64,000 nt of DNA from Zootoca vivipara. Taxonomy: Eukaryota. Location: the NCBI RefSeq assembly GCF_963506605.1, contig NC_083288.1:28706001-28770000 (forward strand), in the 5' to 3' direction. Made by a program: the position numbers and the translations under genes. Below are positions 4,511 to 60,270 of the stretch, piece after piece (position 1 is the stretch's first letter; every line of letters begins with the position of its first letter). The notes beneath the pieces were generated by a model. That model made no database searches. It was not told where the DNA came from and saw only the letters and a list, made by a program, of their open reading frames with translations.

Positions 4511-4544
4511 TTCCTTTGGGTACATAGTCCCAGGAGCCTCATTG
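4511..4544 (-). promoter_or_regulatory. Putative OR1 promoter module (HD + Ebf + Ebf-like)
   Basis: Minus strand CAATGA-G-GCTCCTGGGA-CTATGT-ACCCAAAGGA, 1.9 kb upstream of the ATG (an N gap lies between). Confidence 0.6.
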
Positions 4545-4647
4545 ATTCAGCAGCCTCAAGAATACACTCATTTGTACCTGCTCAAATTGCAAAGAAAAAT
4601 AAAGAAATATGATGTGTTTTATGTGGGGGTGGTCCATAATACAGCAG

Positions 4648-4997
4648 TAAAGGTAAGGGTACCCCTGACCATTAGGTCCAGTCGAGGACGTCTCTGGGGT
4701 TGCGGCGCTCATCTTGCTCTATAGGCCAAGGGAGTCGGTGTTTGTCTGCAGACAGCTTCCGGGTCATGACTAAGCCGCTTCTGGCGAACCAGAGCAGCAC
4801 ACGGAGCCGCCGTTTACCTTCCCACTGGAGCAGTACCTATTTATCTACTTGCACTTTGACATGCTTTCAAACTACTACCTTGGCAGGAGCAGGGACCAAA
4901 CAATGGGAGATCACCCCGTCGCAGGGATTTGAACCACCGACCTTCTGATTGGCAAGCCCTAGGCTCTGTGGTTTAACCCACAGTGCCACCCGCACCC
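4648..4997 (-). mobile_element. Sauria SINE
   Basis: tRNA-like head and (ACCTTT)-type tail; matches the other copies in the window. Confidence 0.9.
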
Positions 4998-5493
4998 AGT
5001 GTACAACAGTAGAGTACATTTTAAATGAAAGTTGCCCAACACCTCATGGTAGGGCTGGGCAAAACTCCTGCCTGATATCCTGGAGAGCTTCCAGCAGTCA
5101 CTAAAGACAATACCGAACCACGTGGACCAGTGGTCTGAGATTGTATAAGGTGACTTTTAATGTTCCTATGTTTCACAACAGTTCCAAACTCATCCCCCTC
5201 ACTGTTTAAATTCCTTGATGGGCTGATTTCCAAACTCCCTTTATCTACAAACATTTCTTAGAATTTGAATAGTTTGGTTATTGAATGACATGGATGGAGA
5301 TACTTCTACCTAAAAATGTTTACCTTTGACATGTCAATTAGATTTGCAAGAATCTTTTATTAGCAATACTAACAGAACAGGTCCAGATAAAACATTGCTC
5401 CCTGTTTAAATATACTTTTAATGTGGCACCTTTCCCCTTCCCAGTTGTCTTCTTAATGCTCCTGTTACTTCAGTTTCATTCAGCTGATAATAA

Positions 5494-5935
5494 TGTTGGA
5501 GATTCATTCCCCGTGTTTGCATTCATGGGATTATTGTCTCTCACATGATGATATATGTTCACATTCCACAGAGTGGGAAGTGATGAAGAAAGGATGTTTG
5601 GTTTACTGTGTGTTCCTGAAGTGGGACTATTGTCCTTTGTTCTTTTTCTTTGCTGTCTGATGCTAGAGAGAGGGGGAGCCATGTTGCAGTGCTCTGTGTG
5701 TGTTTATAGATAAATAAAATAGATTAGCCAAATCCTGTGCTACTGAGGTTTGTTACACAATTGTGCAAACTCTGTGGATCCATAAGTGTGCTGATGTCGC
5801 TTGGCATCAGTTGCTGTGGTGTTCGGGAATAAGAATGCTTTTGAAGCTCCTGAATGATCGACCAGGAGAGAGAGAAGATGCCAGTAGGGCATGTGTGTTT
5901 ACCAGGGTCTTACTCGAGAGTAGGAGATCCTAACA
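5494..5935. mobile_element. Solo LTR
   Basis: TGTTGGA...CCTAACA termini with 5-bp TSD aataa. Confidence 0.85.
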
Positions 5936-6157
5936 AATAAGTCTTTCAACAGACAGGACACAATTTTCAACAGTCTCTCTTCCTTCTTCTGTCATTCCTA
6001 TTCATCTACGTCTGTTCTTGGGGGCAGATGCATGTCTCAACCATCTAGACTACATCTAGGCAGGACTGGGGGAGCCTCAAGTTAAAGTAACGATAAATTA
6101 TAAATAGATAAAAAGTTGCATAAACCTTCTAAGTATCTGGATATTTACAATACTTAA

Positions 6158-6336
6158 TAAAGGTAAAGGGACCCCTGACCATCAGGTCCAGTCATGTCCG
6201 ACTGTGGGGTTGCGGCACTCATCTCGCTCTATAGGCCGAGGGAGCCAGCGTTTGTCCACAGACAGCTTCCGGGTCATGTGGCCAGCATGACAAAGCTGCT
6301 TCTGGTGAACCAGAGCAGCGCACAGAAACACCGTTT
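6158..6336 (-). mobile_element. Sauria SINE, 3' half
   Basis: Similarity to the 3' part of 21294-21660. Confidence 0.85.
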
Positions 6337-7670
6337 AGCTGGAAATTGCTTCCCTGTGATAATCATGAAATATATTGTAGTCGAGGCTGGTGATCCATCA
6401 TTTTTAATTTGATTGCTTAATAGTTTTCGATTTGTTTTAAAAAATGAAAAGTATGCATTTTTTTAAAAAAATTCAATAATATTGAATGTGAAATCTTAAA
6501 CATTTTTATTTGACTATTAAATAAGATGTAAAAAATTATACATTGCTTGATTTCAAATAATAAACAAACAAACAAAACTCCCCAAGCTGTTTACAAAAAT
6601 GATAAAACTATCAATAAGAACAATTAACAGAAATAATTTAACACTTTTGAAAAGTTAAAGTAACAATAAATTAAAAAAAGATTAAAAGTTGCATAAAGCT
6701 TCTAAGTATCTAGATATTTACAATACTTAATATTTTTGTCATTTCTCCTGGGTGTCCTTTATTACTAGTTGCTATTAAATGAAAGAAATGCCCAATAAGA
6801 CTTATTACTTTGTGTCTTAGTTAGCTGATATTATTAAACCATGTTCTTCCTCTACATTCCCGATGGGGTATATTCCCAAGTATGTCACTGATTCGAATTT
6901 AGACTTAAAACCTAGAATACATTTTAGACTTTATTTGGTTGTATATAATTTTATGTTTATTTGAGTTAGAGTTGAACTATACTTGAAGTATGAGGACATT
7001 ACTTTGTATTTTTTATGTTGTACTTTACAATTGATGATTTGATGTATTTTAAACATTTTTCAATAAAGGATTAAAAAAAGAAAAAAAGAACAGCCTCATA
7101 TCATGCAAAATTCATGCTGTTAATCTCTAAAGAAAGAAATTAAGCATCCAAATAATTTTTCATTCAGGTAGAAGTGAACGTAGGCAAATAGGATTGCTGC
7201 CCCCTCTGAAACTGACTGCAGTCATAGACGTGGCTTCCGGTTTAAAACAAAGTGGAGGAGGGCTGCAATAGAGGATAGAATATCAACCCACATAAATATT
7301 TTTTGAAAAAAGTTGAAAGAACAGGGGGGGGGGAATTACTGAATTGTCCATATATCATTCTCTGATATATGGACAATTCAGTAACTTCTTCCCCTGGGAG
7401 GAGGGTGGAGAGAGCATGGGAAGAGAAGAAAGGAAAATTCAATTGCACTTGCAGAGATCATTGCATAATATAAACTTAATTCTACATCCTCAGTAGATTT
7501 AACTAGGGGGTAGAAAATAATAGAATATAGTTGTTCCATTGAAAAAATGTTATCACAAACAAGTAGAACATACCAGTGGATAAAGGCTTGTTCAAAAGCA
7601 GTAGCACCTATGAGAACTTAATTCTGTTCACTATCTCTATGCTCAAATGTTTTTGTTTTTTTTTAAAAAA

Positions 7671-8600
7671 TTAATTCTCTTTTCTTCCCACAAGTCTTTT
7701 TAATGCTCCTTTTACTTCCTGATTCCTGAGTGTATATATGAGTGGATTTAACATGGGAGTCACTATTCCATAGAAGGCAGAAATTATCTTGTCCAATTCA
7801 TGGGTACTTTTAGTTTGTGGTCGGAGATACGAGAATATAGCAGTGCCATAGAAGATTGTTACTACTGTCAAGTGGGATGCACATGTGGAGAAGGCCTTCT
7901 GTCTCCCACCTGATGAATGAATTCTCAGAATTGCCACAACAATACGCAGGTATGAGAAAATGATAAAGGCAAAGGGGGCAAGCAAGGTAAGAACGCCAGT
8001 TAAGAACATCACCAGTTGGTTCATGGAGGTATCTGAACAAACCAACTTCAAAACTGCTTTGAGTTCACATGTCAAATGGTCAATCACATTTTGTTTACAA
8101 AAGCGAGCTGGCATGGTATAAATGGGGATTACCCCCAAGAATAAGCCACTTGCCCATGTCCCGGCTGCTAACTGAATACAAAACTTCCTGCTCATTATTA
8201 GTGTGTAATGTAGTGGACTGGAAATGGCTATATACCTATCATAAGCCATGATGGCCAAAAGGAAGCATTCAGTCACGCCCAAGCCAACACTAATGCTCAT
8301 TTGCAAGTAACACATTGTATAGGACATGGTGGGCTTGTCCACCAGGAGGTTTGCAATGGACTGTGGGACTGAAGATGTTGAATATCCAATGTCAAGGAGG
8401 GAAAGGTTACTGAGGAAAAAGTACATGGGGTTGTGGAGTCGAGGGTCACTTGCAATCACCAAGATGATGAGGCCATTTCCCACCACTGTTATAGAATACA
8501 CAACAGTCACGAAAACTAGTAATCCTATCCTTGTCTTTGGTCTACCAGAATAGCCGATGAGGACAAACTCAGTTACTGTCGTCTCATTTTCCTCTTCCAT
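7671..8600 (-). CDS. Olfactory receptor OR2, 309 aa, closest paralog of OR1
   Basis: LHNPMYFFLSNLS, MAYDRYIAISSPLHY, KAFSTCASHL, PMLNPLIYTLRN; intact ORF. Confidence 0.96.
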   Translation of the reverse strand: MEEENETTVTEFVLIGYSGRPKTRIGLLVFVTVVYSITVVGNGLIILVIASDPRLHNPMYFFLSNLSLLDIGYSTSSVPQSIANLLVDKPTMSYTMCYLQMSISVGLGVTECFLLAIMAYDRYIAISSPLHYTLIMSRKFCIQLAAGTWASGLFLGVIPIYTMPARFCKQNVIDHLTCELKAVLKLVCSDTSMNQLVMFLTGVLTLLAPFAFIIFSYLRIVVAILRIHSSGGRQKAFSTCASHLTVVTIFYGTAIFSYLRPQTKSTHELDKIISAFYGIVTPMLNPLIYTLRNQEVKGALKRLVGRKEN

Positions 8601-9903
8601 ACCCTGAATTCAGTATTATCTGCAAAGACATACAGAAAGGAATTAATCTAAATCAAGGCCATGGTCAAACTACAAAAGAACATTATGCACGCAAGCCTTT
8701 CGGTCAGAGGGGAGGACGACATTTTCTTATGATGCTTTATTTTATTTAATCAGAAAGTTGGTGTGACAATATTACTTCTCTTCAAGTATCATAGGGAAAA
8801 TAATACACATTGTATAATTTAAACATTGTATAATTCTTTGCATGTACGAGATTCTTGATTAAATTATGAAAAACAACACTTTGAATGCAATAAAATGTAA
8901 TCCAAAATGTATTTGTTTAGGGCTTTTTAAGTTCATAAATGTGTTATATATAAAAACCCTACAAAAAATTCAATTTTGTGTGTGACAAACACCAAAATTC
9001 AATTCAATTTTTGTGTGTGACAAACACCAAAAAACCTTACTCAAATTAATAAACAAGATTAATAAAGATGTAAATGTAGCAACAAATAACATTATTATAC
9101 GGTATTTATTATCTACCTTTTCTTAAGGAAAAATAAATGACTGTTTCTTAGCTATGGTTTTACCATTCCATTAATTTACAAAAAGGACAATCTTTCAGTA
9201 AACTTATTATCTCTATATTCTCTTTCACTTTATATACCCTAGAAACTGCAATATGTGAATTGCCTAAGAGCAAATCTAGATCCAAGCGATTTTGCTTAAT
9301 CTGATTGCAGTTAGAATACTCACAGTTTTTCAAAATATAACACATCATCTTTCAGCTGGATAAATTTGGCAAGAGAAATAAAGAATGAAATGAAAACACA
9401 ACAATACCTTTAAATGCTTTTGCCGTTTAAACCTCTGTGGATGTCCCGTGTCTTCCTTTGTCCTTAAATCAAGAAGCAGGATTCTTTAAATTACATGGGA
9501 ATTGCATCCAATCAGTATGTGGAACAATCAGAAAAATCTAAAGATGTTTGAATGGCAACTAGAAAACTAATTCAATGTAATCTTTTATGAGATTTTAGAA
9601 TAATAGTAAGAAGAAAATTAGGTAAAACTAGATACCATATAAGAGGATGCATTTTGCATCTCTTTCATTATGGCATCCTCATTGAAAATGTGTGAAATTG
9701 TCCCTGTGCAGCCCCACAATAAATGCTTGCATTAATAAAGTCTCCTTTTGTGTTCCACAGAACAAAAGTCCAACTATTTTGTTGTTGTTCTTAGGCATCC
9801 ATATAACAGCAAAAAAAAAAAAAAAAAAAAAAGCCCAATAGGACTTTGGTTGACTTTGTTCCTTAGTTGCTTGCTATTTTTAATGAATACTCTCCCTCTT
9901 CAC

Positions 9904-9936
9904 TCCTATGGGTGCATAATCCCAGGAGAATGAATC
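9904..9936 (-). promoter_or_regulatory. Putative OR2 promoter module (HD part degraded)
   Basis: Minus strand TCTCCTGGGA-TTATGC-ACCCATAGGA; paralogous to 4511-4544. Confidence 0.55.
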
Positions 9937-16775: not shown

Positions 16776-17403
16776 GCCATTTTTTTTTTTGAAAAAGAGG
16801 TGCCAGAACTCAGTTCTCCTAGAATAGCAATGGTACCCACCTGAGAGGTGCTGGAACTGGGTTCTGGTGAGTTCCAGCTTGGGGGGGGAAGCCCTGCTTA
16901 TGGGCAGCTTCATTTAGGTTCTGTAAGTGCTTTTGCACAGATAAAATTGGCTAGAAGAAATGCTTTACCCATGAGGATATCATTTGAAACGTTTTTCTCA
17001 TCCCTATGTATTGGAATGCATTTTTCTTTTTTAAAGTCCTCATAGGTTCATATTGTGCATTCTCCCCAGAGCTTAATTTGCTGTAGAGAATTTGTTCATT
17101 ATTTGAATATATTCTGCTCTCAGGATATATCAGATTAAATCCTTGAGTAGGATAGCCCACAGATCTGATTTATAGAACCACTGGATAGATAAATAATTGA
17201 GTATATACAGTGGATATGTTATATAAATGAAACCTATGTTTTTATTTCTATTATTATTATTATTATCATCAATACGGTATTATTTACTCTGTTCATAAAA
17301 AATATTAATGCAGATCTATTACCCCCTCCCTTTCACCCAAAGAAAACTGAAAATATAAGTGTCATGACAGTTTAAAATAATATCTAAATATACTAGATTC
17401 AAT

Positions 17404-18328
17404 CTATGACTGCAGTTTCTTCTCCGCCAGCCTTTTAAGTGCTCCTAACACATCCTGGTTTCTCAGTGTGTAGATTAAAGGGTTTAACATGGGTATCAGA
17501 GCTGCATTAAAGATATAAATAATTTTATCAATAGCATGACTGTCCTTAGATTGAGGTTTGATATATGTGATTATAGAATTTCCAAAGAACACCAGCACTA
17601 CAACCAGGTGAGATCCACAAGTAGAGAAGGCTTTCAGTCTGCTGCCAGATGAATGGATTCTCAAAATGGCCACAAGGATACGCACATAGGAAAAAAAGGA
17701 TGAAACAGAAGGGGAAAAGAACTGTGCAGGTGCTGGTGAAGTACATTGTCAGTTGTCCCACAGCCATGTTTGAACAAATCAATTTCATGAGGGCTGTGAG
17801 CTCACATGCAAAATGATCCACCTCATTATGTCCACAGAAGTGGGCAGGATTTGCAAGACAGGGAACGATAGCAAGTAAGAAGGCCATTGTCCATGATACA
17901 ATAGCTAAAACAATGCAAACTTTCCAGTTCATGATAAGCATATAACGGAGTGGATTGGAGATGGCAACATACCGGTCATAAGCCATGACTGCCAACAAGA
18001 AACATTCTGTTGATCCAAGGTATATGCCAGTGTAAATCTGAATATAACATTTAGCAAAAGACATGACGGGTCTGTCCACCAAACAGTTGGCAATAGATTG
18101 TGGAACTGAAGATGTACAAAGACAGATATCAATGATGGACAGATTGCAGAGGAAGAAGTACATTGGGTTATGGAGCCGAGGATCAGCTGTGACAACAAAG
18201 ACAATGAGTCCATTTCCAATTATGTTTCCCAAGTAGATGATGGTCATTAAAGCTGCCAATCCTATCTTTGTTTTGGGATGTCCAGAAAATCCAATGAGGA
18301 CAAATTCAGTGATGTCAGTCTCATTCAT
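17404..18328 (-). pseudogene. Olfactory receptor OR3 with +1 frameshift (pseudogene or homopolymer sequencing error)
   Basis: ORFs 17546..18328 and 17404..17685 join into a full OR. The A-run at 17691-17697 has 7 A where OR4 and OR5 have 6. Confidence 0.85.
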
Positions 18329-21030: not shown

Positions 21031-21062
21031 TCCCATATGAAACAATCCCCACTGACTACTTT
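21031..21062 (-). promoter_or_regulatory. Putative OR3 promoter module
   Basis: AAAGTA-G-TCAGTGGGGA-TTGTT-TCATATGGGA. Confidence 0.6.
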
Positions 21063-23179: not shown

Positions 23180-24103
23180 TTATGACTGCAGGTTCTTCCC
23201 CACCAGCTTTTTAAGTGCTCCTAATACATCCTGGTTTCTCAGTGTGTAGATTAAAGGGTTTAACATGGGTACTAGTGCTTGATTAAAGATATAAATAATT
23301 TTGTCACTAGCCTGATTGTCTTTAGACTGAGGCTTGATGTATAGTGCTATAGCATTTCCAAAGAACACCAGCACCACAGCTAGGTGAGATCCACAAGTAG
23401 AGAAAGCTTTCAGTCTGCTGCCAGATGAATGGATTCTCAAAATGGCCACAAGGATACGCACATAGGAAAAAATGATGAAACAGAAGGGGAAAAGAACTGT
23501 GCAGGTGCTGGTGAAGTACATTGTCAGTTGTCCCACAGCCATGTTTGAACAAATCAATTTCATGAGGGCTGTGAGCTCACATGCAAAATGATCCACTTCA
23601 TTATGTCCACAGAAATGGGCAGGATTTGCAAGACAGGGAACGATAGCAAGTAAGAAGGCCATTGTCCATGATACAATAGCTAAAACAATGCAAACTTTCC
23701 AGTTCATGATAAGCATATAACGGAGTGGATTGGAGATGGCAACATACCGGTCATAAGCCATGACTGCCAACAAGAAACATTCTGTTGATCCAAGGTATAT
23801 GCCAGTGTACATCTGAATATAACATTTAGCAAAAGACATGACGGGTCTGTCCACCAAACAGTTGGCAATAGATTGTGGAACTGAAGATGTACAAAGACAG
23901 ATATCAATGATGGACAGATTGCAGAGGAAGAAGTACATTGGATTATGGAGCCGAGGATCAGCTGTAACAACAAAGACAATGAGTCCATTTCCAATTATGT
24001 TTCCCAAGTAGATGATGGTCATTAAAGCTGCCAATCCTATCTTTGTTTTGGGATGTCCAGAAAATCCAATGAGGACAAATTCAGTGATTTCAGACTCATT
24101 CAT
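23180..24103 (-). CDS. Olfactory receptor OR4, 307 aa
   Basis: LHNPMYFFLCNLS, MAYDRYVAISNPLRY, KAFSTCGSHL, PMLNPLIYTLRN; intact. Confidence 0.96.
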   Translation of the reverse strand: MNESEITEFVLIGFSGHPKTKIGLAALMTIIYLGNIIGNGLIVFVVTADPRLHNPMYFFLCNLSIIDICLCTSSVPQSIANCLVDRPVMSFAKCYIQMYTGIYLGSTECFLLAVMAYDRYVAISNPLRYMLIMNWKVCIVLAIVSWTMAFLLAIVPCLANPAHFCGHNEVDHFACELTALMKLICSNMAVGQLTMYFTSTCTVLFPFCFIIFSYVRILVAILRIHSSGSRLKAFSTCGSHLAVVLVFFGNAIALYIKPQSKDNQASDKIIYIFNQALVPMLNPLIYTLRNQDVLGALKKLVGKNLQS

Positions 24104-38228: not shown

Positions 38229-38260
38229 TCCCACATGTACTAATCTCCATTGACTAATTT
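38229..38260 (-). promoter_or_regulatory. Putative OR6 promoter module
   Basis: AAATTA-G-TCAATGGAGA-TTAGT-ACATGTGGGA. Confidence 0.6.
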
Positions 38261-40448: not shown

Positions 40449-41396
40449 TTAGTATGTGATGCCTGGCTTTTTGTTACCTAAAAGTCTCTTCAGTGCACCC
40501 AAAACTTCCTGGTTTCTGAGTGTGCAAACTAAAGGGTTAAACACAGGTGTAAGCACTGCACTGAATGCTGCGAGTACTTTTTCCATCTCATGAGTCTTCT
40601 CATTCTGAGGGAAAAGGTAGACAAATATGGCTGTGCCATAGTACATAGTCACTACCGCCAGGTGAGACCCACATGTAGAGAAAGCCTGCATTCTGCCTCC
40701 TTCTGAGTGCATTCTTACAATGGCTGCTAGAATGCGCATATAGGAGAAAAGGATAAAACTAAGGGGAAGAATTAGTGACAAAGTACTGGTGAAGTATACG
40801 ATTATTTGGCTCATAGAGGTATCCGTACAAATGAGCTTAAACATAGATTTGAATTCACATCCTATATGGTCCACCTCATTGTTTCCGCAAAACCTAGCTG
40901 GCTTAGCAAGACAAGGCACTACTGTTATAAGAAAGGCTGCCATCCATGTAGAAGTTGCCAACAAGATGCACACTGTCCTGTTAATAATGAGTGTGTAGCA
41001 CAGTGGATTGGAGATGGCAATGTATCGGTCATAAGCCATGACAGCCAGGAAGAAACATTCGGTTGTACCAAATAAGAGAATAGAATACATTTGTGTGTAG
41101 CATGCAGCAAGAGACATTACAGGCCTGTCCACTAAGCAGTTGGCTATAGATTGTGGGAGTGACGTTGTTGTGAGGCAGAGGTCAATAATGGACAAATTGC
41201 AGAGGAAAAAATACATGGGGTTGTGGAGCCGTGGGTCACATATGACTACCACAACAATAAGTCCATTCCCAAGAACTGTTATGAAGTAGGAAATTATAAA
41301 AACTGTCATTAAAACCATCCTTGACTTGGGTCGACCTGACCAGCCGATGAGGATAAATTCAGACACAGCTGTTTCATTTTCGCCTACTTCCTGCAT
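40449..41396 (-). CDS. Olfactory receptor OR7, 315 aa (atypical NPLVC in TM7)
   Basis: OR motifs present. Track start 41420 is TTG; the ATG at 41396 follows acceptor ttttcttttgctacattccag. Confidence 0.93.
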   Translation of the reverse strand: MQEVGENETAVSEFILIGWSGRPKSRMVLMTVFIISYFITVLGNGLIVVVVICDPRLHNPMYFFLCNLSIIDLCLTTTSLPQSIANCLVDRPVMSLAACYTQMYSILLFGTTECFFLAVMAYDRYIAISNPLCYTLIINRTVCILLATSTWMAAFLITVVPCLAKPARFCGNNEVDHIGCEFKSMFKLICTDTSMSQIIVYFTSTLSLILPLSFILFSYMRILAAIVRMHSEGGRMQAFSTCGSHLAVVTMYYGTAIFVYLFPQNEKTHEMEKVLAAFSAVLTPVFNPLVCTLRNQEVLGALKRLLGNKKPGITY

Positions 41397-44053: not shown

Positions 44054-44085
44054 TCCCTTTAGGCATGCTCCCAAATGTCTCGTTA
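44054..44085 (-). promoter_or_regulatory. Putative OR7 promoter module
   Basis: TAACGA-G-ACATTTGGGA-GCATG-CCTAAAGGGA. Confidence 0.65.
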
Positions 44086-47306: not shown

Positions 47307-47308
<2 letters not shown>

Positions 47309-47619: not shown

Positions 47620-47651
47620 TAATGAGGCAATAGAGAATCTGCTCAGAGGGA
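47620..47651 (+). promoter_or_regulatory. Putative OR8 promoter module (plus orientation, matching its gene)
   Basis: TAATGA-G-GCAATAGAGA-ATCTG-CTCAGAGGGA. Confidence 0.6.
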
Positions 47652-49022
47652 ATAAAAAACAGTAAGTAAATAAGTATGTAAATAAAATGCTATGCCATAG
47701 TTTCTTAAATAAAATCTCCCACTGAAAACCAGATAGCTGTTTCTCCATTCATTTGCACAGATGATATGGGGAGTCTTATTCAAGCAGTATGTCTGCATTT
47801 TTCTTTCTTTTTATGAATCTGCAATTGCTGACTCCTTAAACACACAAGGCAATCCAAAAACAGTGGGTTATCTTCTTCTGTGTTCAATGAGATTTAAGAA
47901 GGCAAGAATAATTTTTGCTTACTTTTCGTTGTCCTCATTATAATAATTCTCATTCAGTCTGTTTGGTAGTAAGTGTCATTGCTTATGCAGACACATTTAT
48001 TTTAAATTGTTTATTTCTTTTTCTTTTTTCTTTAATCCTAAAATACTCCTATCCCACTTTTGGAATGAAGAAAGATAAATTTATCACAAGGCTTGTGGTG
48101 GGGGTGAGAACCAAAGGTTTAGCAGTTGTGCACAATTTTCTTTTTAGGATAAAAACCCCAAGTGGGTAATCCCTGAGGTAGCTCAATAAGGAATAAACTT
48201 CATGTTCAGTGGCCAGTGGAATGCTGACTCACTATTCGAGGAGGGTAGCAAAATATGCAAAACTCAGTTGGAAAAGAAATGGAATAGAAGTATCCTGGGT
48301 GATGGCTTAGCTGACTGACTATTGTCATTGGGGTGGTTTTCTCTCAGTTATTTGGCAGGCTCTATTACCAGACTCTTCCTTGAATTATCAACATAATTAA
48401 ACAGAAGTTAATGTATTTTTTATATGCATGGAAATAAAGCCGTGGTCTTATGAATACCTCCCTGGAACTAAGCTTCACAGAACATAGCAGCAATTTCTGA
48501 TGTGTAAAATAGCATTGTGTTACAAAAAAGTGCAATATAACTTACTATTTGGGTAAGTTTAAAATATCGTGACGAAATATGCTTTTCAATCTATTGTTGT
48601 TTCTGATTCTGTTCATTACATCTTCCTACAATATGATATAGAAAATATACATATATGTGTTGTGTTATAAGACTGATAAATTGTCAAAATCCTGGGATAT
48701 CTTTCTTGAAAGATTTTATAGGCTCAATGAAAAGAATCGGTGTTAGACACAGTTGCAACTTTCAGCCTTGCATATCAGTTTGAAGGTTAGCCTAGAATCT
48801 TCTCCCACTGTTTATTGTTTTTAAGTGGGGAATCGAGAGGCAACCTATCATGCAATCTTCTACAGTGCAGCAAAACATCTACAGCAGCATCTCCTGCTTG
48901 TGTATGAACTACAATTCCAAAATAGACCAAGCATGGTACACAATAGTTTGATCTAATTAAATGTATTTAAATGTACTAAAATATAATATATATAATATAT
49001 AATATATTTCAGATCCATCTTC

Positions 49023-49970
49023 ATGCAGCAAGTGGGAGAAAATGAGACAGAAGTGACTGAATTTATTCTCATCGGGTGGTCAGATCGACCCAAATCAAGA
49101 ATGGCTTTAATGACCTTTTTGATCATTTCCTATTCAATAATAGTTATTGGAAATGGTCTTATTATCTTTGTAGTCATATACGATCCAAAGCTTCATAATC
49201 CCATGTATTTCTTCCTCTGCAATTTGGCCATCCTTGACCTCTGCCTCACAGCAACAGCAATCCCACAATCAATAGCTAATTGCTTAGTGGACAGACCTGT
49301 AATGCTTCTTCCTATGTGCTATGCACAGATGTATGCTCTTCTTCTGTTCGGTACAACAGAATGTTTCCTTCTGGCTGTCATGGCTTATGATCGTTATGTT
49401 GCCATTTCCAATCCGCTGCGTTACACCATGATTATGAACAGAACAGTGTGCATCCTCCTCGCCACCGCAACATGGACTGCTTCCTTTATGATTACTGTGA
49501 TTCAATCTATTGCTAATCCCATTCGATTCTGTGGAAACAATGAGGTTGACCATATAGGATGTGAAGTTAAATCTGTTATTAAGCTCATTTGTGCAGAGTC
49601 CTCTTCAAGCCAGATAAGCATGTACTTCACTAGCACTTTGACACTGGTTCTTCCTTTGGGCTTCATCCTTTTTTCCTACATGCGCATTCTTGTGACCATC
49701 CTTAGGATCCACTCAGAAGGAGGTAGGACAAAGGCTTTCTCCACCTGTGGTTCCCATCTGACTGTAGTGATCATGTACTATGGCACAGCTATATTCACTT
49801 ACCTCCTACCACAAAATGCAGGGACACATGAGATAGAAAAAATAATATCTCCATTTAATTCAGTGCTGACTCCCATGTTTAATCCTTTAATTTATACACT
49901 CAGAAACCAAGAAGTCTTGGGTGCATTGAAGAAACTGATAGGTAAGAAAAAACCAGACATAACATATTAA
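49023..49970 (+). CDS. Olfactory receptor OR8, 315 aa, the only plus-strand member
   Basis: LHNPMYFFLCNLA, MAYDRYVAISNPLRY, KAFSTCGSHL, PMFNPLIYTLRN; C-terminus KKPDITY resembles OR7. Confidence 0.96.
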   Translation: MQQVGENETEVTEFILIGWSDRPKSRMALMTFLIISYSIIVIGNGLIIFVVIYDPKLHNPMYFFLCNLAILDLCLTATAIPQSIANCLVDRPVMLLPMCYAQMYALLLFGTTECFLLAVMAYDRYVAISNPLRYTMIMNRTVCILLATATWTASFMITVIQSIANPIRFCGNNEVDHIGCEVKSVIKLICAESSSSQISMYFTSTLTLVLPLGFILFSYMRILVTILRIHSEGGRTKAFSTCGSHLTVVIMYYGTAIFTYLLPQNAGTHEIEKIISPFNSVLTPMFNPLIYTLRNQEVLGALKKLIGKKKPDITY

Positions 49971-50136
49971 ATAGATACATAGCTTTCTTATTTGGATGTT
50001 TCCCCTTTAAATCACTTTATTTTCCCATTGTATGATTTTCACTGGATTCTTATTTTGGGTTCAGCAAACTGCAGGTTAATATTACAGGCCCTTTAAATGA
50101 ATGTTCACCATCTGGAATTCTTCAAAAATGTAAATG

Positions 50137-50503
50137 TAAAGGTAAAGGAAAAGGTACCCCTGACCATTAGGTCCAGTCGCGGACAACTCTGGGGTTGCGG
50201 CACTCATCTCGCTCTATAGGCCGAAGGAGTTGGCGTTTGTCTGCAGACAGCTTCCAGGTCATGTGGCCAGCATAACTAAGCCGCTTCTGGCGAACCAGAG
50301 CAGCACACGGAAACACTGTTTACCTTCCCGCCGGAGTGGTACGTATTTATCTACTTGCACTTGACGTGATTTCGAACTGCTAGGTTGACAAGAGCTAGGA
50401 CCGAGCAACGGGAGCTCACTCCGTTGCAGGGATTTGAACCACCAACCTTCCAATCAGCAAGCCCTGGGCTCTGTGGTTTAGACCACAGTGCCACCCGTGT
50501 CCC
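50137..50503 (-). mobile_element. Sauria SINE
   Basis: Full-length reverse copy; TSD-like ttcaaaaatgt on both sides. Confidence 0.9.
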
Positions 50504-50970: not shown

Positions 50971-51129
50971 NNNNNNNNNNNNNNNNNNNNNNNNNNNNNN
51001 NNNNNNNNNNNNNNNNNNNNNNNNNNNNNNNNNNNNNNNNNNNNNNNNNNNNNNNNNNNNNNNNNNNNNNNNNNNNNNNNNNNNNNNNNNNNNNNNNNNN
51101 NNNNNNNNNNNNNNNNNNNNNNNNNNNNN
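50971..51129. other. Assembly gap
   Basis: Run of N. Confidence 1.
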
Positions 51130-52093
51130 TTTTTAGGGCTATAAAGCCCATTACACTCCATAGAGTGTAGTGGGGGTTGTGGAAGAGCTCAAAAGAAATC
51201 TGGGAGAGGGTGGGCTGTAGTTAGACTTAGCCATTGAGGCGTGTCACATGTCACAGTTTTGATTGACAGGAGCCACTTATTTAAACTCAGGCACTTTCAT
51301 TTTCAGCTCACTCTCGGTAAGCCTTTGAATCTCCCGCCCGCCCGCCGCCGTGTTATAGGCTTTAGCTGACATTGCTTTGCCTTTTCAGGGGTCGCCTGTA
51401 TTCAGGGGCCCAGTAGGAATTTTGCCACTTGGCTGATTGGCTGTTGCCATTTGCTTTTTGCCTACTGATTAGCAAATTGTCACAACTTGTTAGGTTGGCC
51501 GTTAGGCTTTGGTTAATAAATTGGTTATAGGAGGGGCATGGCATGAATTTGCCTACCCCCCTATCTTGCTCCTCACAGAAGTATTCCGTTAAAGGAATCC
51601 TGGGGCTCAGGGACTCTAGTCCATTCATCCTGCCATAGGCAAGGATGGTGCGGCCATTACAGAGCTGAGCCTTGGGGAACATTCCTGGGTCAAGAGGAGA
51701 GTGCCTGTGAACAGTACCTCCACTACCATGGGGTGTTTACTTCACTTACCTACCCATAGGTAAGTCGGAGCTGGTCCTGACCCAAAAGGGGGTCAGATGG
51801 AATTGGTGCTGCCCAAACCAGGCAGATGGAATTGGTCCTGACCCAACAAGGGTCAGTTGGAATTGGTCCTACCCAAACCAGGCAGATGGAATTGGTCCTG
51901 ACCCAACAAGGGTCAGATGGAAATGGTCCTGTCCCTTAGAGTGGACAGATGGATTAACCAAAGCCTAAGCCAACACTCAGAATTAATTGTATTTAAATAA
52001 AGTTGTGGCCAAAATAATGCCAAAAACCCAAACCTAAAATATCGTGTGAGTTGTGAGTTATTTACGGGATTTATGGGAGCTTCGTCACGCAAT
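51130..52093 (+). mobile_element. Ngaro/DIRS-like terminal repeat element
   Basis: ggtcgcctgtattcaggggcc block and aataaagttgtggcc...cacgcaa end, shared with 15640-15720 and 1370-1528. Confidence 0.65.
51744..51953 (+). repeat. Array of ~30-bp hairpin units
   Basis: Six units ggtcCTG-stem-loop-CAGatggaatt preceded by a perfect 9-bp hairpin. Confidence 0.85.
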
Positions 52094-52219
52094 TAATTTC
52101 TTAGCTCAGTTGTTGAATCATTCTGCCACATTCTCTTTTAGTGTAGAAATTGGAGTTCTTGGTGAAGTCCAGAAATAAACAGTAAATTGCAAGAACTCGG
52201 GCCAGGAGGAAGATGAATT

Positions 52220-52439
52220 TCAAGTAAGTCTTCAAAAGGTTTTATTTATGTAAGGATGGGATGAATTCAAATAGGAATCAATTCCATACTTGGTATACCA
52301 GGACCATTAAAACAGGGCCTTGTCTTGGGGTTTTTTCACTGGAATTAATTTTTATTTGCCTCACTATCATACTGGAATTGATTCCTATTTGAATTCATCC
52401 TATCATTACATAAATAAAACCTTTTGAAGACTTACTTGA
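52220..52439. repeat. ~67-bp inverted repeat
   Basis: tcaagtaagtcttcaaaaggttttatttatgtaa... at 52220 is the reverse complement of sequence ending at 52439. Confidence 0.85.
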
Positions 52440-52507
52440 CATTCTCTTTTAGGTCATGATTTCCCCTCATTCCCAAAAAGAATATTTTAGCACTCTGCTT
52501 TTTGTGT

Positions 52508-52539
52508 TCCCTTTGGACATATTCCCAGATGTCTCATTA
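52508..52539 (-). promoter_or_regulatory. Orphan OR promoter module (no co-oriented OR CDS of its own)
   Basis: TAATGA-G-ACATCTGGGA-ATATG-TCCAAAGGGA; flank ~52480-52870 is paralogous to ~60215-60595. Confidence 0.6.
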
Positions 52540-52879
52540 CTTTCTGAAGTTGCTCCACAACTAAAACTGAAGTGAATAACTTTGCAAAAATTAACTTGAG
52601 GGTAAAAGAACTACTTAATGTAAGTCAATGAAAAATGTCATGTTGATTTTGGAGAACTCCTGCAATGGTATCGATCTAATGAGTTTAAGCCACATCCTTC
52701 TCAGTATTATTATTTAGTATATTTATACATCATAATCATTTAGTACATTGATTTAGTACTTTTGTATTCCAGCTTTCTTCCACCATTGACTTCTGTGGAG
52801 TCTCAAGGTGAACTTCCATTCAGGTAGTTCTAGGTCTGCTTAGCATTAGCAAGGTAGCATTATCATTATCCGCCACAGT

Positions 52880-56600: not shown

Positions 56601-57533
56601 CTATAAGCTTTTTGTAAACAGAAACCTCTTCAATGCTCCCAACACGTCCTGGTTTCTGAGTGTATAAATTAAAGGATTGATCATGGGCGTCAGCACTCCA
56701 TAAAATGCAGAAATTATTTTGTCAACGTCACGCGTGTTCTTATTTTGAGGGAGGAGGTATGTAAATATGCATGTGCCATAGAACATGCAAACCACAGCCA
56801 GGTGGGACCCACAGGTGGAAAATGCCTTCATCCTGCCTCCTGATTTCATCCTCAGGATGGCTGCAAGGATACGCATGTAGGAAAAAAGGATGAAGCCAAG
56901 GGGCAGAACCAGCGTTAAAGTGCTAGTGAAGTATATGCTTAGTTGGCTCATAGAGGTATCTGTACAAATGAGTTTGAAAACAGCTTTAAATTCACATGAT
57001 AAATGGTCCACCTCATTGTTTCCACAGAATCTAGCTGGCTTTGCAAGGCAGGGGACTACTGTTAACATAAAGGCGCTAAACCAAGTCACAGAAGCCAAGA
57101 CGGTGCAAACTGTATTGTTCATTATGAGCATGTAGCGGAGTGGGTTGGAGATGGCAATGAATCGATCGTAAGCCATGACAGCAAGAAGGAAGCATTCGGT
57201 TGAGCCAAAGAAAAGGCCAGTGTAGAGTTGGGTGAGGCATAAAGGAAAAGACATGACAGGTCTGTCCTCCAGGCAGTTGGCTATAGATTGTGGGACTCCA
57301 GATGATGACATGCACAGATCAAGGATGGACAAATTGCACAGGAAAAAATACATGGGGTTGTGGAGCCGTGGATCAGCTATAACCACCACCACAATGAGTC
57401 CATTTCCAACAACTGTAATCGAATATGCAATTATCATGAACACCATTAAACCCATCCTTGACTTGGGGCGGCCCGACCATCCAATAAGAACAAATTCAGT
57501 CACTGCGGTCTCATTTTCTCCTACTTCCTGCAT
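56601..57533 (-). CDS. Olfactory receptor OR9, 310 aa
   Basis: All OR motifs; ICL3 is one residue shorter (LRMKSGGR) than in paralogs. Confidence 0.96.
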   Translation of the reverse strand: MQEVGENETAVTEFVLIGWSGRPKSRMGLMVFMIIAYSITVVGNGLIVVVVIADPRLHNPMYFFLCNLSILDLCMSSSGVPQSIANCLEDRPVMSFPLCLTQLYTGLFFGSTECFLLAVMAYDRFIAISNPLRYMLIMNNTVCTVLASVTWFSAFMLTVVPCLAKPARFCGNNEVDHLSCEFKAVFKLICTDTSMSQLSIYFTSTLTLVLPLGFILFSYMRILAAILRMKSGGRMKAFSTCGSHLAVVCMFYGTCIFTYLLPQNKNTRDVDKIISAFYGVLTPMINPLIYTLRNQDVLGALKRFLFTKSL

Positions 57534-59475
57534 AAAGGCTGATAAGATGGGGATGGGGAGAGATAAATAATGACGTTTAAATATTTTAAAAATAGATTAG
57601 AACACAATTAAACAAATTTATTTGTTATTTACTGGGCATGTCTATTTTTCAGATGCCTAGGTTATTTAACAGAAGATGAAGCAATAAAGCATCAGACTGT
57701 GAGATTGAATGTGACCATATAGAAAAATTTATGAGCATAGAAAACATCTAAATCTCAGATAAGTGTATTAATGTGGGCTGACACAAACTGCCTGAGTTCC
57801 CAGGGAACATTTATAATGTTATTCTGTGTCTAGAATTGTTATGGTTGAGTTAATTATTTCATTCATTTATTTATTTACCATCATTTCTAAGCAACTTAAT
57901 TTTGTTTAATCCCTAAGTGTTGAAAAGGATAACATAAAAACAGTAAAACAGAGTGATAAAAACGTATAAAAATAGCAAAAATATAAAACCACTGATGTAT
58001 TTATATATTACTTTTTTATTTCATTGAGGGAAATGAAGGCAGTGCCTTTTCCAATGGAATTTTCCATTAATTTCTATTATTTTGCATCTTTAGACACAGA
58101 GTAATCCCTCAACATAATACTATAAATATTACTATGGTCCATAACTTTCAAGGGCCAGAATTCTCCCTAATAGCGAATTGAGGTAGATGAGTGCCTATCA
58201 GTTTGGAAACTAAACAATGTCATTTACAAATTAAGGAGTTGATTACTAGACTCTTGGCATGAAGAAACATAGAAGAGTATGAATAAAAATAAAATTCATG
58301 TTTAATTACTCACCCCCCCCAAAACCCCACTTGTATCAAATAATAAAGAAAAGCAAGGAAAGATAAATAAATATGTTTCCTCCTTTTCACAACCCCTTCT
58401 ATGGCAGGGCTGGGGGCCCTCAGATCCAGGAGCTGAATGCAACCCTCTGGCTCATGACTTTTTTTCTCTTTCTCCCCCCCCCCCAAAAAATATATTTATT
58501 GATTCTATAAAACTAATATACAGTATATATATATATAACACGAAAATACAAAAAATCACATAAAACACAAAAATACAAAATACAAAAAAGAGAGAGAAAA
58601 AAAGTTTTTTCTCTTTCAAGGCCACAACACCTTCCAAGTTGCAACACTCAGTAACCCTGTTTCGAACCCTTAAGTATATTTGCATGGCTGAAATATGCAT
58701 TTGAAGTCTGATAATGTCTCTTGCTTGCCTAGACAGAGAGGAGTGTGTGTGTGCGCGCATGCTTGCTCGCTCGTAGGAACTAGTCTACGGACATATCCCA
58801 CCCCCGACACAGCAAGTGTCTGCACACTCAAAAGAGTTAGCCACCAAACTCATCTAGCCCAACCTGTTGTGACCTCAGTTGCTTCTTTTCAGTTCTGAAC
58901 TCTTAGCCCCAACCTTGGACTCTGCAATACTGAACTATTCTTTCTAGGCTACCTACTCTCACCTTTCCTGTCACCTAGCTAGAGTGTAAAGGCTTCTGTG
59001 ACTCATTGCCTATTGCTGAGCCTGTACCTCTACTTTGCCTCAGTAAACCTCTCTTCCTTATACTCAAGTAAGAGACTCCGACCACTGAACTTTCTTACAG
59101 TAAATTATCATATCCTCCATTTCTCTGATTAAAATAGGGTTGTCCTGGTGAATACGAATAAGAATTCTACTCTGCACATCTGACCGTGTTGCCCAAGCCA
59201 CTCTGGACAACTTCCAGTATATATGCAAACATAATAAAACTTTAAACATAAAAAAACTTCTCAACACAAGGCTGCCTTCAGATTTCTCCCAAGGTTTGTA
59301 CAGCTACTTATCACATTGGTTCGTGGGGACCCATAACTCTATGCCCTCCAACATTTCTCCAATGAAAATAGGGATGCCCTAAGGAAAAGTAGGACATTCT
59401 GGGACCAACTAAAAAACTAGGATGCCTTCTGTAAATCCAGGACTGGCCTTGGGAAACAGAGATTTGGAGGGTCTG

Positions 59476-59517
<42 letters not shown>

Positions 59518-60238
59518 TCATGGGTGGCCATTGTGAGGGTAAACGGACACATGTTTCCTTTCCACAATGTAAACTTTTAAGGGAAATTTATGATGCAAAT
59601 ATATGTCTTGCGAAGCAGAACAAGAAAATAACATAGTGAACATTTTATCCACAACATTTTCATTTCTCCCTTCCCCATACAGTCAGAAAAACAGAAATGA
59701 GCAAACCTTGCATAGCCATTTCTATTAATTTTAACCGGTCTTTTAGTACTTTGAGTGTGACTGCCAGTGGATGCAGCCCCTAGTAGCCCCTTGTAAGAAA
59801 ATCACACAGCCTATGGACACATCAATAATTTTATTATAATACTAATGACTAGCTATTGTTGTTTCTAGGAGAGTGAGGGAGAGAATAGTATTTTGCACAT
59901 TATATATGGAACAAAATTGATATAAATGCAGAAAAAAGAAAACATAGGTAGGATTTAACTGTAAGCAAAGCTAGAAAAGAAATAACTTGGTAGAAATCCT
60001 GGTTTGAAATAGTCCTATTCATTAATACAAATACAATTTACATTACCTTTTAATGCACTAATAGTTCAAGCACTCTTAGAAGAATTAGCACTGGAGAATC
60101 AGGATTATTATTATTTTTTAAGGGCCAAGCAAACCACACAGATGGCGCCTGAGTAAATTAATGTAACTAATTTTCAATGGGAGTTTTTATATAGGAAACA
60201 ATGGGCTAGATTTTATTTTAGTGCTCTGCTTTTTGTCT

Positions 60239-60270
60239 TCCCATTGGGTGCATTCCCAAATGTCTCATTA
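60239..60270 (-). promoter_or_regulatory. Putative OR9 promoter module
   Basis: TAATGA-G-ACATTTGGGA-ATGCA-CCCAATGGGA. Confidence 0.65.

What the first reader, a model, noticed from the sequence alone, without database searches (positions are those of the whole stretch)
4511..60270. Fixed-spacing ~32-bp homeodomain + Ebf + Ebf module upstream of all nine ORs
Seen: 1.2-2.7 kb upstream of each OR, always in the gene's orientation (it flips with OR8), there is a hexamer (TAATGA/TAACGA/AAATTA/CAATGA), 1 nt, a 10-mer ending GGGA/GAGA, 5 nt, and a 10-mer ending GGGA. Copies start at 21031, 25349, 31557, 38229, 44054, 47620, 52508 and 60239; those at 4511 and 9904 have a 6-nt spacer and a second 10-mer ending AGGA, and 9904 lacks a clear hexamer. 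Spacer bases vary and flanks diverge between subfamilies, but the geometry holds. Known: mammalian OR promoters and enhancers use Lhx2/Emx2 homeodomain sites and O/E (Ebf, TCCCNNGGGA) sites, and mouse Greek Island enhancers are enriched for a composite Lhx2-Ebf motif. Inference: this reptile subfamily may carry an enhancer-like composite plus a second phased Ebf site in each gene's own promoter, which I do not know to be described in squamates.
Basis: partly seen in the sequence, partly recalled or inferred. Interest (0 to 1): 0.8.

Follow-up and report, generated by a model that had tools for sequence, protein, structure and literature searches.

The report
Lizard smell-receptor genes share promoter module
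Every smell-receptor gene in this lizard cluster keeps the same ~33-letter stretch 1.2-2.7 kb ahead of its coding part, carrying likely docking sites for known olfactory gene-switch proteins. It is most likely the genes' ordinary promoter kept by selection, and only its rigid spacing is unusual.

Summary
I found an eleventh copy at 6858-6890.

The module is not just leftover paralogous similarity:
- In each of three old subfamilies (58-68% protein identity) it is, or overlaps, the most conserved window of the whole upstream unit.
- Between subfamilies nothing else aligns, yet unbiased profile-profile and de novo motif searches land on it.
- Information sits in .AAT.A, .C....GGGA and .C....GGGA; the 5-6-nt spacer carries almost none.
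- In B and C it lies in the longest and third-longest indel-free alignment runs.
- Every copy is followed at +16 to +31 by an A/T run, and every OR has a splice acceptor just upstream of its ATG.

Best reading: the proximal promoter of a non-coding first exon, of the known homeodomain + O/E type.

The "Greek-Island composite" geometry (homeodomain site, 1 bp, O/E site) matches the mouse definition. But the published pattern is too permissive to prove anything.

TSS, factor binding and conservation in other squamates could not be tested.

The parts
4512..4544 (-). Module copy of OR1 (family A, 6-nt spacer, second site ends AGGA); A/T run at 4478-4493
   Evidence: best non-training hit in the whole window of a PWM built from families B+C
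6858..6890 (-). Eleventh module copy, family A type, no OR of its own (orphan or far-upstream alternative promoter of OR1); degenerate hexamer; A/T run at 6828-6838
   Evidence: aligns in register with the OR2 module region (72% over 101 nt, E 2e-8)
9904..9936 (-). Module copy of OR2 (family A); hexamer disrupted by a 4-bp deletion relative to OR1; both 10-mers kept; A/T run at 9875-9884
21031..21062 (-). Module copy of OR3 (family B); A/T run at 20994-21000
25349..25380 (-). Module copy of OR4 (family B); first 17 nt match the published mouse composite pattern exactly; A/T run at 25311-25318
31557..31588 (-). Module copy of OR5 (family B); A/T run at 31519-31526
38229..38260 (-). Module copy of OR6 (family B, most divergent member); exact match to the published composite pattern; A/T run at 38193-38199
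44054..44085 (-). Module copy of OR7 (family C); head-to-head with the OR8 module; A/T run at 44016-44026
47620..47651 (+). Module copy of OR8 (family C), the only + strand copy, flipped with its gene; exact match to the published composite pattern; A/T run at 47667-47673
52508..52539 (-). Orphan module copy (family C). Homology with the OR9 unit covers 52483-52867 only and ends about 25 nt 3' of the module; A/T run at 52481-52489
60239..60270 (-). Module copy of OR9 (family C); A/T run at 60210-60220
1682..2602 (-). OR1 coding exon (family A), 7tm_4
   Evidence: acceptor-like YAG about 30 nt 5' of the ATG
7671..8600 (-). OR2 coding exon (family A)
   Evidence: acceptor 19 nt 5' of the ATG
17407..18328 (-). 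OR3 (family B), frameshifted after about residue 210: pseudogene or assembly error
   Evidence: acceptor 9 nt 5' of the ATG
23180..24103 (-). OR4 coding exon (family B), 7tm_4
28006..28923 (-). OR5 coding exon (family B); the listed ORF runs further 5' through the acceptor
   Evidence: acceptor 12 nt 5' of the ATG at 28923
34844..35791 (-). OR6 coding exon (family B)
40449..41396 (-). OR7 coding exon (family C)
49023..49970 (+). OR8 coding exon (family C), 7tm_4.
56601..57533 (-). OR9 coding exon (family C), 7tm_4; 95% identical to a Podarcis muralis OR, 84% to a gecko OR13H1-like protein
50971..51129 (.). Assembly gap between OR8's 3' end and the orphan module; flanked by dispersed repeats; continuity untested
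3893..4061 (.). Assembly gap inside the putative OR1 intron, about 450 nt 3' of the OR1 module

Best explanation
The module is the conserved core of the proximal promoter of a short non-coding first exon of each OR13H1-like gene.

Proposed mechanism, which is inferred and not shown. In olfactory neurons a LIM/paired-type homeodomain factor (Lhx2 or Emx2 in mammals) binds the .AAT.A hexamer. O/E (Ebf) family dimers bind the two .C....GGGA sites, one placed 1 bp from the homeodomain site and one 15-16 bp further on. The fixed spacing lets the factors occupy the DNA together. An A/T-rich TATA-like box 16-31 nt downstream then positions RNA polymerase II, so that transcription would start roughly 45-65 nt 3' of the module. 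The transcript would be spliced to the acceptor 5-30 nt upstream of the ATG.

The module was present in the ancestor of the three subfamilies and has been held by purifying selection while the surrounding non-coding DNA diverged beyond alignment.

Shown here: position, orientation, geometry, and conservation above the flanks both within and between subfamilies; lack of indels in families B and C; the A/T run; the acceptors.

Inferred: the identity of the factors, the TSS, and the exon-1 donor.
For: (1) POSITION AND ORIENTATION. There are 11 copies, all in the sense of the OR array. Nine lie 1,246-2,706 bp 5' of an OR ORF. OR7 and OR8 are head to head and each has its own copy on its own strand. 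So the element belongs to the 5' side of the gene downstream, not to the 3' side of a neighbour.

(2) CONSERVATION WITHIN SUBFAMILIES. Taking windows of module width across the whole unit (1.2 kb upstream of the module to the ATG), the module ranks 1 of 4,538 in B, 3 of 3,339 in A (peak at +8) and 8 of 4,486 in C (peak at -15). Mean pairwise identity is 0.74-0.79 against 0.23-0.30 overall.

(3) BETWEEN SUBFAMILIES. blastn finds only transposon and simple-repeat matches in 4.5 kb upstream. Its score is 17.4; column-shuffled maxima have mean 13.9, sd 1.1 and largest 17.9. The best A-C (32-column window) and A-B (17-column window) pairs fall on the second 10-mer plus its 3' flank and exceed all 100 shuffles.

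(4) DE NOVO MOTIF SEARCH. My own MEME-like one-site-per-sequence search ran on the sense strand of 3.5 kb upstream of each ATG, chosen without reference to the module. At width 33 the top motif is the module, in register, in all seven B and C genes. PWMs built without one family recover OR1, OR4 and the C copies as the best non-training hits of 127,936 positions.

(5) FOOTPRINT-LIKE PATTERN. The consensus is .AAT.A g .Ca.t.GgGA N5-6 .C..a.GGGA A. Relative entropy is 0.8-1.0 bit per position in the three blocks and 0.2 in the spacer. In B the module sits in the longest indel-free run (81 columns, rank 1 of 82) and in C in the third longest.

(6) CORE-PROMOTER CONTEXT. An A/T-only run of 7 or more nt starts at +16 to +31 in 11 of 11 copies, against 45% of background windows. 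A polypyrimidine-YAG acceptor lies 5-30 nt 5' of every ATG.

(7) AGREEMENT WITH MOUSE OR PROMOTERS. These have O/E sites enriched in the 200 bp before the TSS, homeodomain sites, TATA boxes at -60 to -10 in about 39%, and 36% GC (PMC3247239).

(8) AGE. Subfamilies are 58-68% identical in protein, while OR9 is 84% identical to a gecko protein. The subfamilies are therefore probably older than crown squamates. This is an inference from identities.
Against: - No transcript evidence.
- The copies are paralogues, so there are effectively three independent lineages, not eleven.
- Score-level significance between families is modest. Single-family 32-mer PWMs give cross-family scores (9-14 bits) inside the range of maxima from Markov-random windows (mean 11-12, sd 3). 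A 20/32 identity between two 3-kb regions is expected by chance.
- The 10-mers are weak O/E sites, with 1-4 mismatches to TCCCNNGGGA. GGGAA cores also fit other factors such as Ikaros and Zfp423/Roaz-type proteins.
- The hexamer differs between families (TAATGA, CAATGA, AAATTA). In OR2, an intact gene, it is destroyed.
- At widths 17-24 the motif search prefers another register, with B's second site aligned to C's first. The site-by-site homology between families is therefore not unique.
- Splice donors 3' of the module are not clearly conserved.
Confidence: 0.65

Rival explanations
1. The module is a gene-proximal enhancer of the Greek-Island type, a homeodomain-O/E composite carried next to every gene, and not the core promoter. 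The TSS would lie elsewhere, and the module would work by cooperative Lhx2/Ebf/Ldb1 assembly.
For: The hexamer-1 nt-10-mer geometry and orientation equal those of the mouse composite. Three copies match the published search pattern exactly and five more with one mismatch. The spacing is held without indels in families B and C.
Against: There is one copy per gene at a stereotyped place, followed by a TATA-like run. That is promoter-like. Greek Islands are few per cluster, intergenic, and carry several sites. The published pattern is non-specific here, with 292 hits against 200 expected. No second cluster of sites accompanies the module.
Confidence: 0.12
2. The module is passive residual similarity among tandem duplicates, with no function. 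The eye picked the best-matching GGGA-rich stretch in each upstream region.
For: Single-family PWM cross-scores are within random maxima. Identity between the family consensuses is only about 20/32. The orphan copy at 52508 is no better conserved in the module (27/32) than its 74%-identical flank would predict.
Against: In three subfamilies independently the module is the conservation peak of a 2.5-3.9 kb unit. Three unbiased between-family comparisons each put their best window pair, out of about 4 million, on the module region. The spacer is free while the blocks are fixed, and indels are excluded in B and C. De novo search recovers it.
Confidence: 0.08
3. It is a real promoter element, but it is read by other factors than Lhx2/Emx2 and Ebf. 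Candidates are a GGGAA-binding zinc-finger protein (Ikaros family, Zfp423/Roaz-type) or another homeobox protein.
For: Only C at position 2 and GGGA are conserved in each 10-mer, with 1-4 mismatches to the O/E palindrome. Young et al. 2011 discuss that O/E and Ikaros matrices cannot be told apart by sequence alone (PMC3247239; the detail comes from my reading of that paper).
Against: The pairing of a homeodomain core with O/E-type half-sites is the one combination known to mark OR promoters and enhancers. The 1-bp juxtaposition is the mouse composite geometry.
Confidence: 0.15

Closest known systems
Mammalian OR proximal promoters (for example M71, P3; genome-wide analyses by Young et al. 2011, PMC3247239; Michaloski 2006, Clowney 2011 and Plessy 2012 cited from my own knowledge)
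   Same: Both are AT-rich and CpG-poor and lie upstream of a non-coding first exon that is spliced to a single coding exon. Both have O/E-like and homeodomain sites just 5' of the TSS and TATA-like boxes in a subset. [quoted passage not shown]
   Different: No fixed arrangement of the sites is reported for mouse promoters. Here the homeodomain site, 1 nt, an O/E-like site, 5-6 nt and a second O/E-like site are held across three old subfamilies. The TSS is not mapped here. The organism is a lacertid lizard, for which I found no promoter study.
Greek Island composite Lhx2-Ebf motif (Monahan et al. 2017, PMC5608512; Pulupa et al. preprint, PMC11643329)
   Same: A homeodomain site lies directly 5' of an O/E site with 1 bp between them, and the O/E half is relaxed to a pyrimidine-then-purine pattern. 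The Sfaktiria probe has the layout hexamer + 1 + 10-mer. Three copies fit the published 17-nt pattern exactly and five more with one mismatch.
   Different: In mouse the composite is enriched in intergenic enhancers and depleted from OR promoters: 4 of the first ~212 promoters in the source data score above 10 (reviews). Here it sits once per gene in promoter position, with a second O/E-like site added. Binding, HOMER score and chromatin state are untested.
Promoters conserved within chemoreceptor subfamilies (mouse V1R promoters, PMC1955453; the OR37/mOR262 subfamily, from my own knowledge)
   Same: Paralogous receptor genes keep a recognisable promoter block with shared motifs after tandem duplication.
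   Different: Those cases concern conservation within a subfamily over hundreds of bp. Here only about 33-50 bp survives between subfamilies whose flanks no longer align.

Membership tests
Vertebrate OR proximal promoter (homeodomain + O/E type) | Lies 5' of the OR coding exon, in gene orientation, separated from it by an intron | tested here: met
   Nine copies lie 1,246-2,706 bp 5' of ORFs, all in sense, and the copy flips with OR8. A YAG acceptor lies 5-30 nt 5' of every ATG.
Vertebrate OR proximal promoter (homeodomain + O/E type) | O/E-like site(s) within about 200 bp 5' of the TSS | tested here: inconclusive
   There are two conserved .C....GGGA 10-mers with 1-4 mismatches to TCCCNNGGGA. 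12 of 22 have 2 or fewer mismatches, against 0.3% of background positions. The TSS is unknown.
Vertebrate OR proximal promoter (homeodomain + O/E type) | Homeodomain (TAAT-core) site(s) near the O/E site | tested here: met
   The hexamer is TAATGA/TAACGA in C, AAATTA (TAAT core on the other strand) in three of the four B copies (AAAGTA in OR3), and CAATGA in OR1. It is lost in OR2 and degenerate at 6858-6890.
Vertebrate OR proximal promoter (homeodomain + O/E type) | AT-rich, CpG-poor context, TATA-like box at -60 to -10 in a subset | tested here: inconclusive
   An A/T run of 7 or more nt starts at +16 to +31 from the module in 11 of 11 copies, against 45% of background windows. Its position relative to a TSS is unknown.
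Vertebrate OR proximal promoter (homeodomain + O/E type) | Transcripts start just 3' of the sites in olfactory neurons | not testable with these tools
Vertebrate OR proximal promoter (homeodomain + O/E type) | Bound by Lhx2/Emx2 and Ebf proteins | not testable with these tools
   Needs EMSA, ChIP or CUT&RUN.
Greek Island composite Lhx2-Ebf motif | Homeodomain and O/E sites side by side, 1 bp apart, homeodomain site 5' of the pyrimidine half | tested here: met
   This geometry is present in 10 of 11 copies, all but OR2. The definition comes from PMC11643329 and the Sfaktiria probe.
Greek Island composite Lhx2-Ebf motif | Match to the published search pattern WWAHDRRBHHHHNDRDD | tested here: inconclusive
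   No mismatch in OR4, OR6 and OR8; one in OR1, OR5, OR7, OR9 and the orphan at 52508; 2-4 in OR3, OR2 and 6858-6890. The pattern hits 292 places in the window against 200 expected.
Greek Island composite Lhx2-Ebf motif | HOMER composite score above 10 (stringent) or 5 (permissive) | not testable with these tools
   The matrix is not on hand; only scores of mouse regions are in the source data.
Greek Island enhancer | Intergenic element, few per cluster, with several Lhx2/Ebf sites, accessible in most olfactory neurons | tested here: not met
   There are eleven copies in 64 kb, one per gene at a stereotyped promoter-like place, with a single homeodomain site each. Accessibility was not testable.

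The most novel reading that the evidence does not exclude
In this squamate OR family the gene's own promoter carries the Greek-Island-type composite (homeodomain site, 1 bp, O/E site) plus a second O/E site at a fixed 15-16 bp. In mouse that arrangement marks the intergenic enhancers and is depleted from promoters. If Lhx2 and Ebf really co-occupy it, promoter-level rigid motif grammar would be an old feature of at least some amniote ORs, probably predating crown squamates. The mouse division of labour between weak promoters and strong composite enhancers would then be either derived or not universal.
Probability: 0.2. Interest if true: 0.65.

Novelty: new member of a known kind. Interest (0 to 1): 0.4.

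Why it matters
OR gene choice is understood almost only from the mouse. There, promoters carry loosely arranged homeodomain and O/E sites, and only the intergenic enhancers carry the tightly spaced composite.

A lizard OR family has held a fixed homeodomain-O/E-O/E arrangement in promoter position while everything around it diverged. That gives three things:
- a ready-made, 33-bp testable element for the first functional study of OR regulation in a reptile;
- a natural spacing series: 5 against 6 nt spacers, a copy without the homeodomain site, two orphan copies and one upstream of a pseudogene;
- a test of whether the promoter/enhancer distinction drawn in mouse holds across amniotes.

If it turns out to be an ordinary promoter, it still helps annotate the 5' exons of squamate ORs.

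Tried and rejected
TOOLS THAT FAILED.
No TSS and no between-species substitution map were obtained. No letters of 49372-49407 were sent to a search tool afterwards. Local scripts did read the whole window file for background statistics.
Upstream DNA of the Podarcis, gecko, Elgaria, Tiliqua and snake orthologues found could not be fetched.

ANALYSES WITH WEAK OR NEGATIVE RESULTS.
- Single-family ungapped 32-mer PWMs. Cross-family scores are not above the maxima of Markov-random windows, so this route gives no significance. I used profile-profile and leave-family-out two-block PWMs instead.
- MAFFT of all ten copies aligned family B's second 10-mer with the others' first. The same alternative register appears in the motif search at widths 17-24.
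- The published composite pattern proved too permissive to serve as a membership test.
- A donor-site scan 3' of the modules (using my own approximate donor matrix) found candidates. These are AAG|GTAAGC at +550/+575 in OR4/OR3 and, seen in the alignments, an AAG|GTATT shared by OR1 and OR2. No donor was shared by all families, so exon 1 remains undefined.

IDEAS REJECTED.
- The module as part of a transposon. Flanks differ between families, and the dispersed repeats found do not include it.
- The module as a 3' element of the upstream neighbour. This is excluded by the OR7/OR8 head-to-head pair.

A first version of the motif-search script favoured masked stretches through a scoring bug. It was corrected.

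Full report
WHAT IS IN THE WINDOW

The window holds a tandem cluster of nine olfactory receptor ORFs: eight on the minus strand and OR8 on the plus strand. The four scanned against Pfam (OR1, OR4, OR8, OR9) match 7tm_4 strongly. OR3 is frameshifted after about residue 210; its homology runs over 17407-18361. OR9 is 95% identical to a Podarcis muralis OR. Its next relatives are OR13H1-like proteins of a gecko (84%), Elgaria (81%), Tiliqua (79%) and snakes (about 68%). So the source is a lacertid lizard.

By protein identity the genes fall into three subfamilies:
- A: OR1 and OR2, 80% identical.
- B: OR3 to OR6, 69-84% among OR4, OR5 and OR6.
- C: OR7 to OR9; OR7 and OR9 are 75% identical. OR8 was left out of the identity matrix and is assigned to C from the upstream alignments.

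Between subfamilies the identity is 58-68%. That is lower than OR9 against its gecko relative, so the subfamilies are probably older than crown squamates. This is an inference from identities, not a dated tree.

THE OBSERVATION

In gene orientation each reads: hexamer, 1 nt, 10-mer ending GGGA or GAGA, 5 nt (6 nt in family A), 10-mer ending GGGA (AGGA in OR1 and OR2). Distances to the ORF start are 1,246-2,706 bp. GRGA-N11-GGGA occurs 10 times against 2.84 expected, and 8 of those are modules.

The site at 52508-52539 has no gene. PWM scans turned up an eleventh copy at 6858-6890 (-), between OR2 and the OR1 module. It aligns in register with the OR2 promoter region (72% over 101 nt, E 2e-8) and with OR1 over about 150 nt. 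It is a second orphan, or a far-upstream alternative promoter of OR1.

THE ASSEMBLY GAPS

The gap at 50971-51129 lies between OR8's stop and the orphan module. It is flanked on the left by a dispersed repeat that has at least seven copies in the window, and on the right by another repeat. There is no OR-like coding sequence anywhere between 49968 and 56603. No module, ORF or alignment used here crosses it.

Homology between the orphan and the OR9 unit covers only 52483-52867 against 60214-60592. It ends about 25 nt 3' of the module, 1.35 kb before the gap. So the orphan's downstream part is already replaced, whatever the gap hides. Continuity across the gap could not be tested. A second gap (3893-4061) sits in OR1's putative intron.

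IS IT MORE THAN PARALOGOUS RESIDUE?

Within each subfamily I aligned the whole unit, from 1.2 kb upstream of the module to the ATG, and slid a window of module width:

| Subfamily | Rank of module window | Note |
|---|---|---|
| B | 1 of 4,538 | |
| A | 3 of 3,339 | peak at +8 |
| C | 8 of 4,486 | peak at -15, overlapping |

Mean pairwise identity in the module is 0.74-0.79 against 0.23-0.30 overall.

Between subfamilies, blastn of 4.5 kb upstream finds only transposon and simple-repeat matches. An unbiased profile-profile comparison of all window pairs gave these results:
The score is 17.4, against column-shuffled maxima with mean 13.9, sd 1.1 and largest 17.9.
- A against C: at the 32-column window, the best pair falls on the second 10-mer plus about 20 nt 3' of it, above all 100 shuffles.
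- A against B: at the 17-column window, the best pair falls on the same region, also above all 100 shuffles.

I also wrote a MEME-like one-site-per-sequence search and ran it on the sense strand of 3.5 kb upstream of each ATG. These regions were chosen without reference to the module. At width 33 the top motif is the module, in register, in all seven B and C genes, with or without family weighting. Family A is missed by that ungapped model because of its extra spacer base. A two-block PWM built from B and C, allowing 5-6 nt, recovers OR1 as the best non-training hit of 127,936 positions. OR2, whose hexamer is gone, ranks only 149.

CAVEATS ON THE STATISTICS

- The eleven copies are paralogues, so there are about three independent lineages.
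- Single-family 32-mer PWMs give cross-family scores inside the range of maxima from random windows.
- The identity between family consensuses (about 20/32) would be unremarkable without the co-location.
- At widths 17-24 the search prefers another register, in which B's second site pairs with C's first; both read roughly CATNTGGGAATGCA. This suggests the two 10-mers are two copies of one kind of site. It also means the site-by-site homology between families is not unique.

ANATOMY

The consensus across the eleven copies is .AAT.A g .Ca.t.GgGA N5-6 .C..a.GGGA A.
- Relative entropy is 0.8-1.0 bit per position in the hexamer and the two 10-mers, but 0.2 in the spacer.
- Both 10-mers keep C at position 2 (10 of 11 copies each) together with the GGGA.
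- In B the module lies in the longest indel-free run of the alignment (81 columns, rank 1 of 82). In C it lies in the third longest (52 columns, rank 3 of 77).
- Against TCCCNNGGGA the 22 10-mers have 1-4 mismatches. Twelve have 2 or fewer, a level reached by 0.3% of background positions. They are weak, half-site-heavy O/E-like sites.
- The hexamers are TAATGA or TAACGA in C, AAATTA (TAAT core on the other strand) in three of the four B copies (AAAGTA in OR3), and CAATGA in OR1.
- OR2 lost its hexamer through a 4-bp deletion, and the orphan at 6858-6890 has a degenerate one.
- The centre-to-centre distance of the two 10-mers is 15-16 bp, about one and a half helical turns. They are not 'phased' on one face.

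PROMOTER CONTEXT

- Every copy is followed by an A/T-only run of 7 or more nt starting at +16 to +31. The position is family-specific: about +19/+20 in A and in OR9 and its orphan, and +30/+31 in B. Examples are TAAAAATA and TAATATAA types. 45% of background windows have such a run. The copies are not independent, so I give no probability.
- Family A also shares an AACTAAG box just after the run.
- Every OR has a polypyrimidine-YAG acceptor 5-30 nt upstream of its ATG. This implies an upstream non-coding exon, as in mammalian ORs.
- OR7 and OR8 are head to head, each with its own module on its own strand. The element therefore belongs to the 5' side of the gene downstream.
- Donor sites 3' of the module are not clearly shared, so exon 1 is undefined.

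COMPARISON WITH WHAT IS KNOWN

Mouse OR promoters are AT-rich (36% GC) and lack CpG islands. They are enriched for O/E sites in the 200 bp before the TSS and for homeodomain sites, and have TATA boxes at -60 to -10 in about 39% (PMC3247239). The lizard module followed by a TATA-like run fits that architecture if the TSS lies about 45-65 nt 3' of the module.

The mouse Greek Island composite is an Lhx2 site and an Ebf site 'stereotypically separated by 1bp' (PMC11643329). The Sfaktiria EMSA probe reads hexamer + 1 nt + 10-mer (PMC5608512, supplementary file 7).

The published fuzznuc pattern matches OR4, OR6 and OR8 exactly and five more copies with one mismatch. But it hits 292 places in this window against 200 expected, so it discriminates poorly.

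In mouse the composite is described as enriched in enhancers and depleted from, or not found in, promoters. In the first ~212 promoter rows of the source data, 4 score above 10. I found no paper on OR promoters of lizards or snakes in the searchable library.

VERDICT

This is most likely the conserved core of the proximal promoter of these OR13H1-like genes. It is of the known homeodomain + O/E kind and has been held by selection since before the three subfamilies split (confidence 0.65). What is unusual is the rigid grammar: composite-like 1-bp juxtaposition plus a second site at a fixed distance, in promoter position. Whether that is functionally a 'composite' is open (about 0.2).

Local scripts read the whole window for background counts.

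Noticed in passing
It is of family A type, lies 780 bp 3' of OR2's stop and 4.3 kb 5' of OR1's ATG, and has no OR-like coding sequence of its own. Its homeodomain hexamer is degenerate.
   Followed up: yes
window 17407-18361 (-): OR3 is nearly identical to OR4 up to about residue 210 and then shifts frame. It is a pseudogene or an assembly error, yet it keeps its module, with two departures from the family B consensus.
   Followed up: partly
window 18816-19229, 29963-30479, 39574-39738 (all -): Degenerate OR-like fragments (27-75% identity over short pieces). Two lie inside the putative 5' introns of OR3 and OR5, and one lies between OR7 and the OR6 module. They may explain why some module-to-ATG distances are 2.4-2.7 kb instead of about 1.3 kb.
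   Followed up: partly
A permissive Rfam scan (E up to 1) of 29900-30700 on both strands found no RNA family at all.
   Followed up: partly
window 50136-50503, with copies at 21294-21662, 4647-4992, 22553-22893, 36085-36427, 27415-27628, 6158-6340: A dispersed repeat of about 360 bp, 80-87% identical between copies, on both strands. It is probably a SINE or other transposon. One copy borders the assembly gap.
   Followed up: no
window 52210-52448 and 51772-51930: An inverted self-match and a short tandem duplication lie just 3' (gene sense) of the orphan module, where its homology with the OR9 unit breaks off. This may be the rearrangement that removed the orphan's gene.
   Followed up: no
window 17063-17079 (-): A lone composite-like site (AAATTA, 1 nt, GCTCTGGGGA) about 330 bp 3' of OR3. 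It matches the published composite pattern but has no second GGGA site and no conservation partner. It may be chance.
   Followed up: no
window about 4065-4081 and 9400-9417 (-): OR1 and OR2 share a donor-like AAG|GTATT about 430-490 nt 3' of their modules. In OR1 it lies directly beside the gap at 3893-4061. It is a candidate end of exon 1 in family A.
   Followed up: no
window 4450-4470, 9855-9870, 6800-6820 (-), approximate: Family A promoters share an AACTAAG box just after the TATA-like run, near where the TSS would be expected.
   Followed up: no
other windows of the same genome (earlier notes s1-851018, s1-850950, s1-854871, s1-849388): First readers noted homeodomain + O/E-like promoter modules upstream of V2R genes of the same genome. 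These notes are unchecked. If true, the same factor pair marks both receptor classes in this lizard.
   Followed up: no
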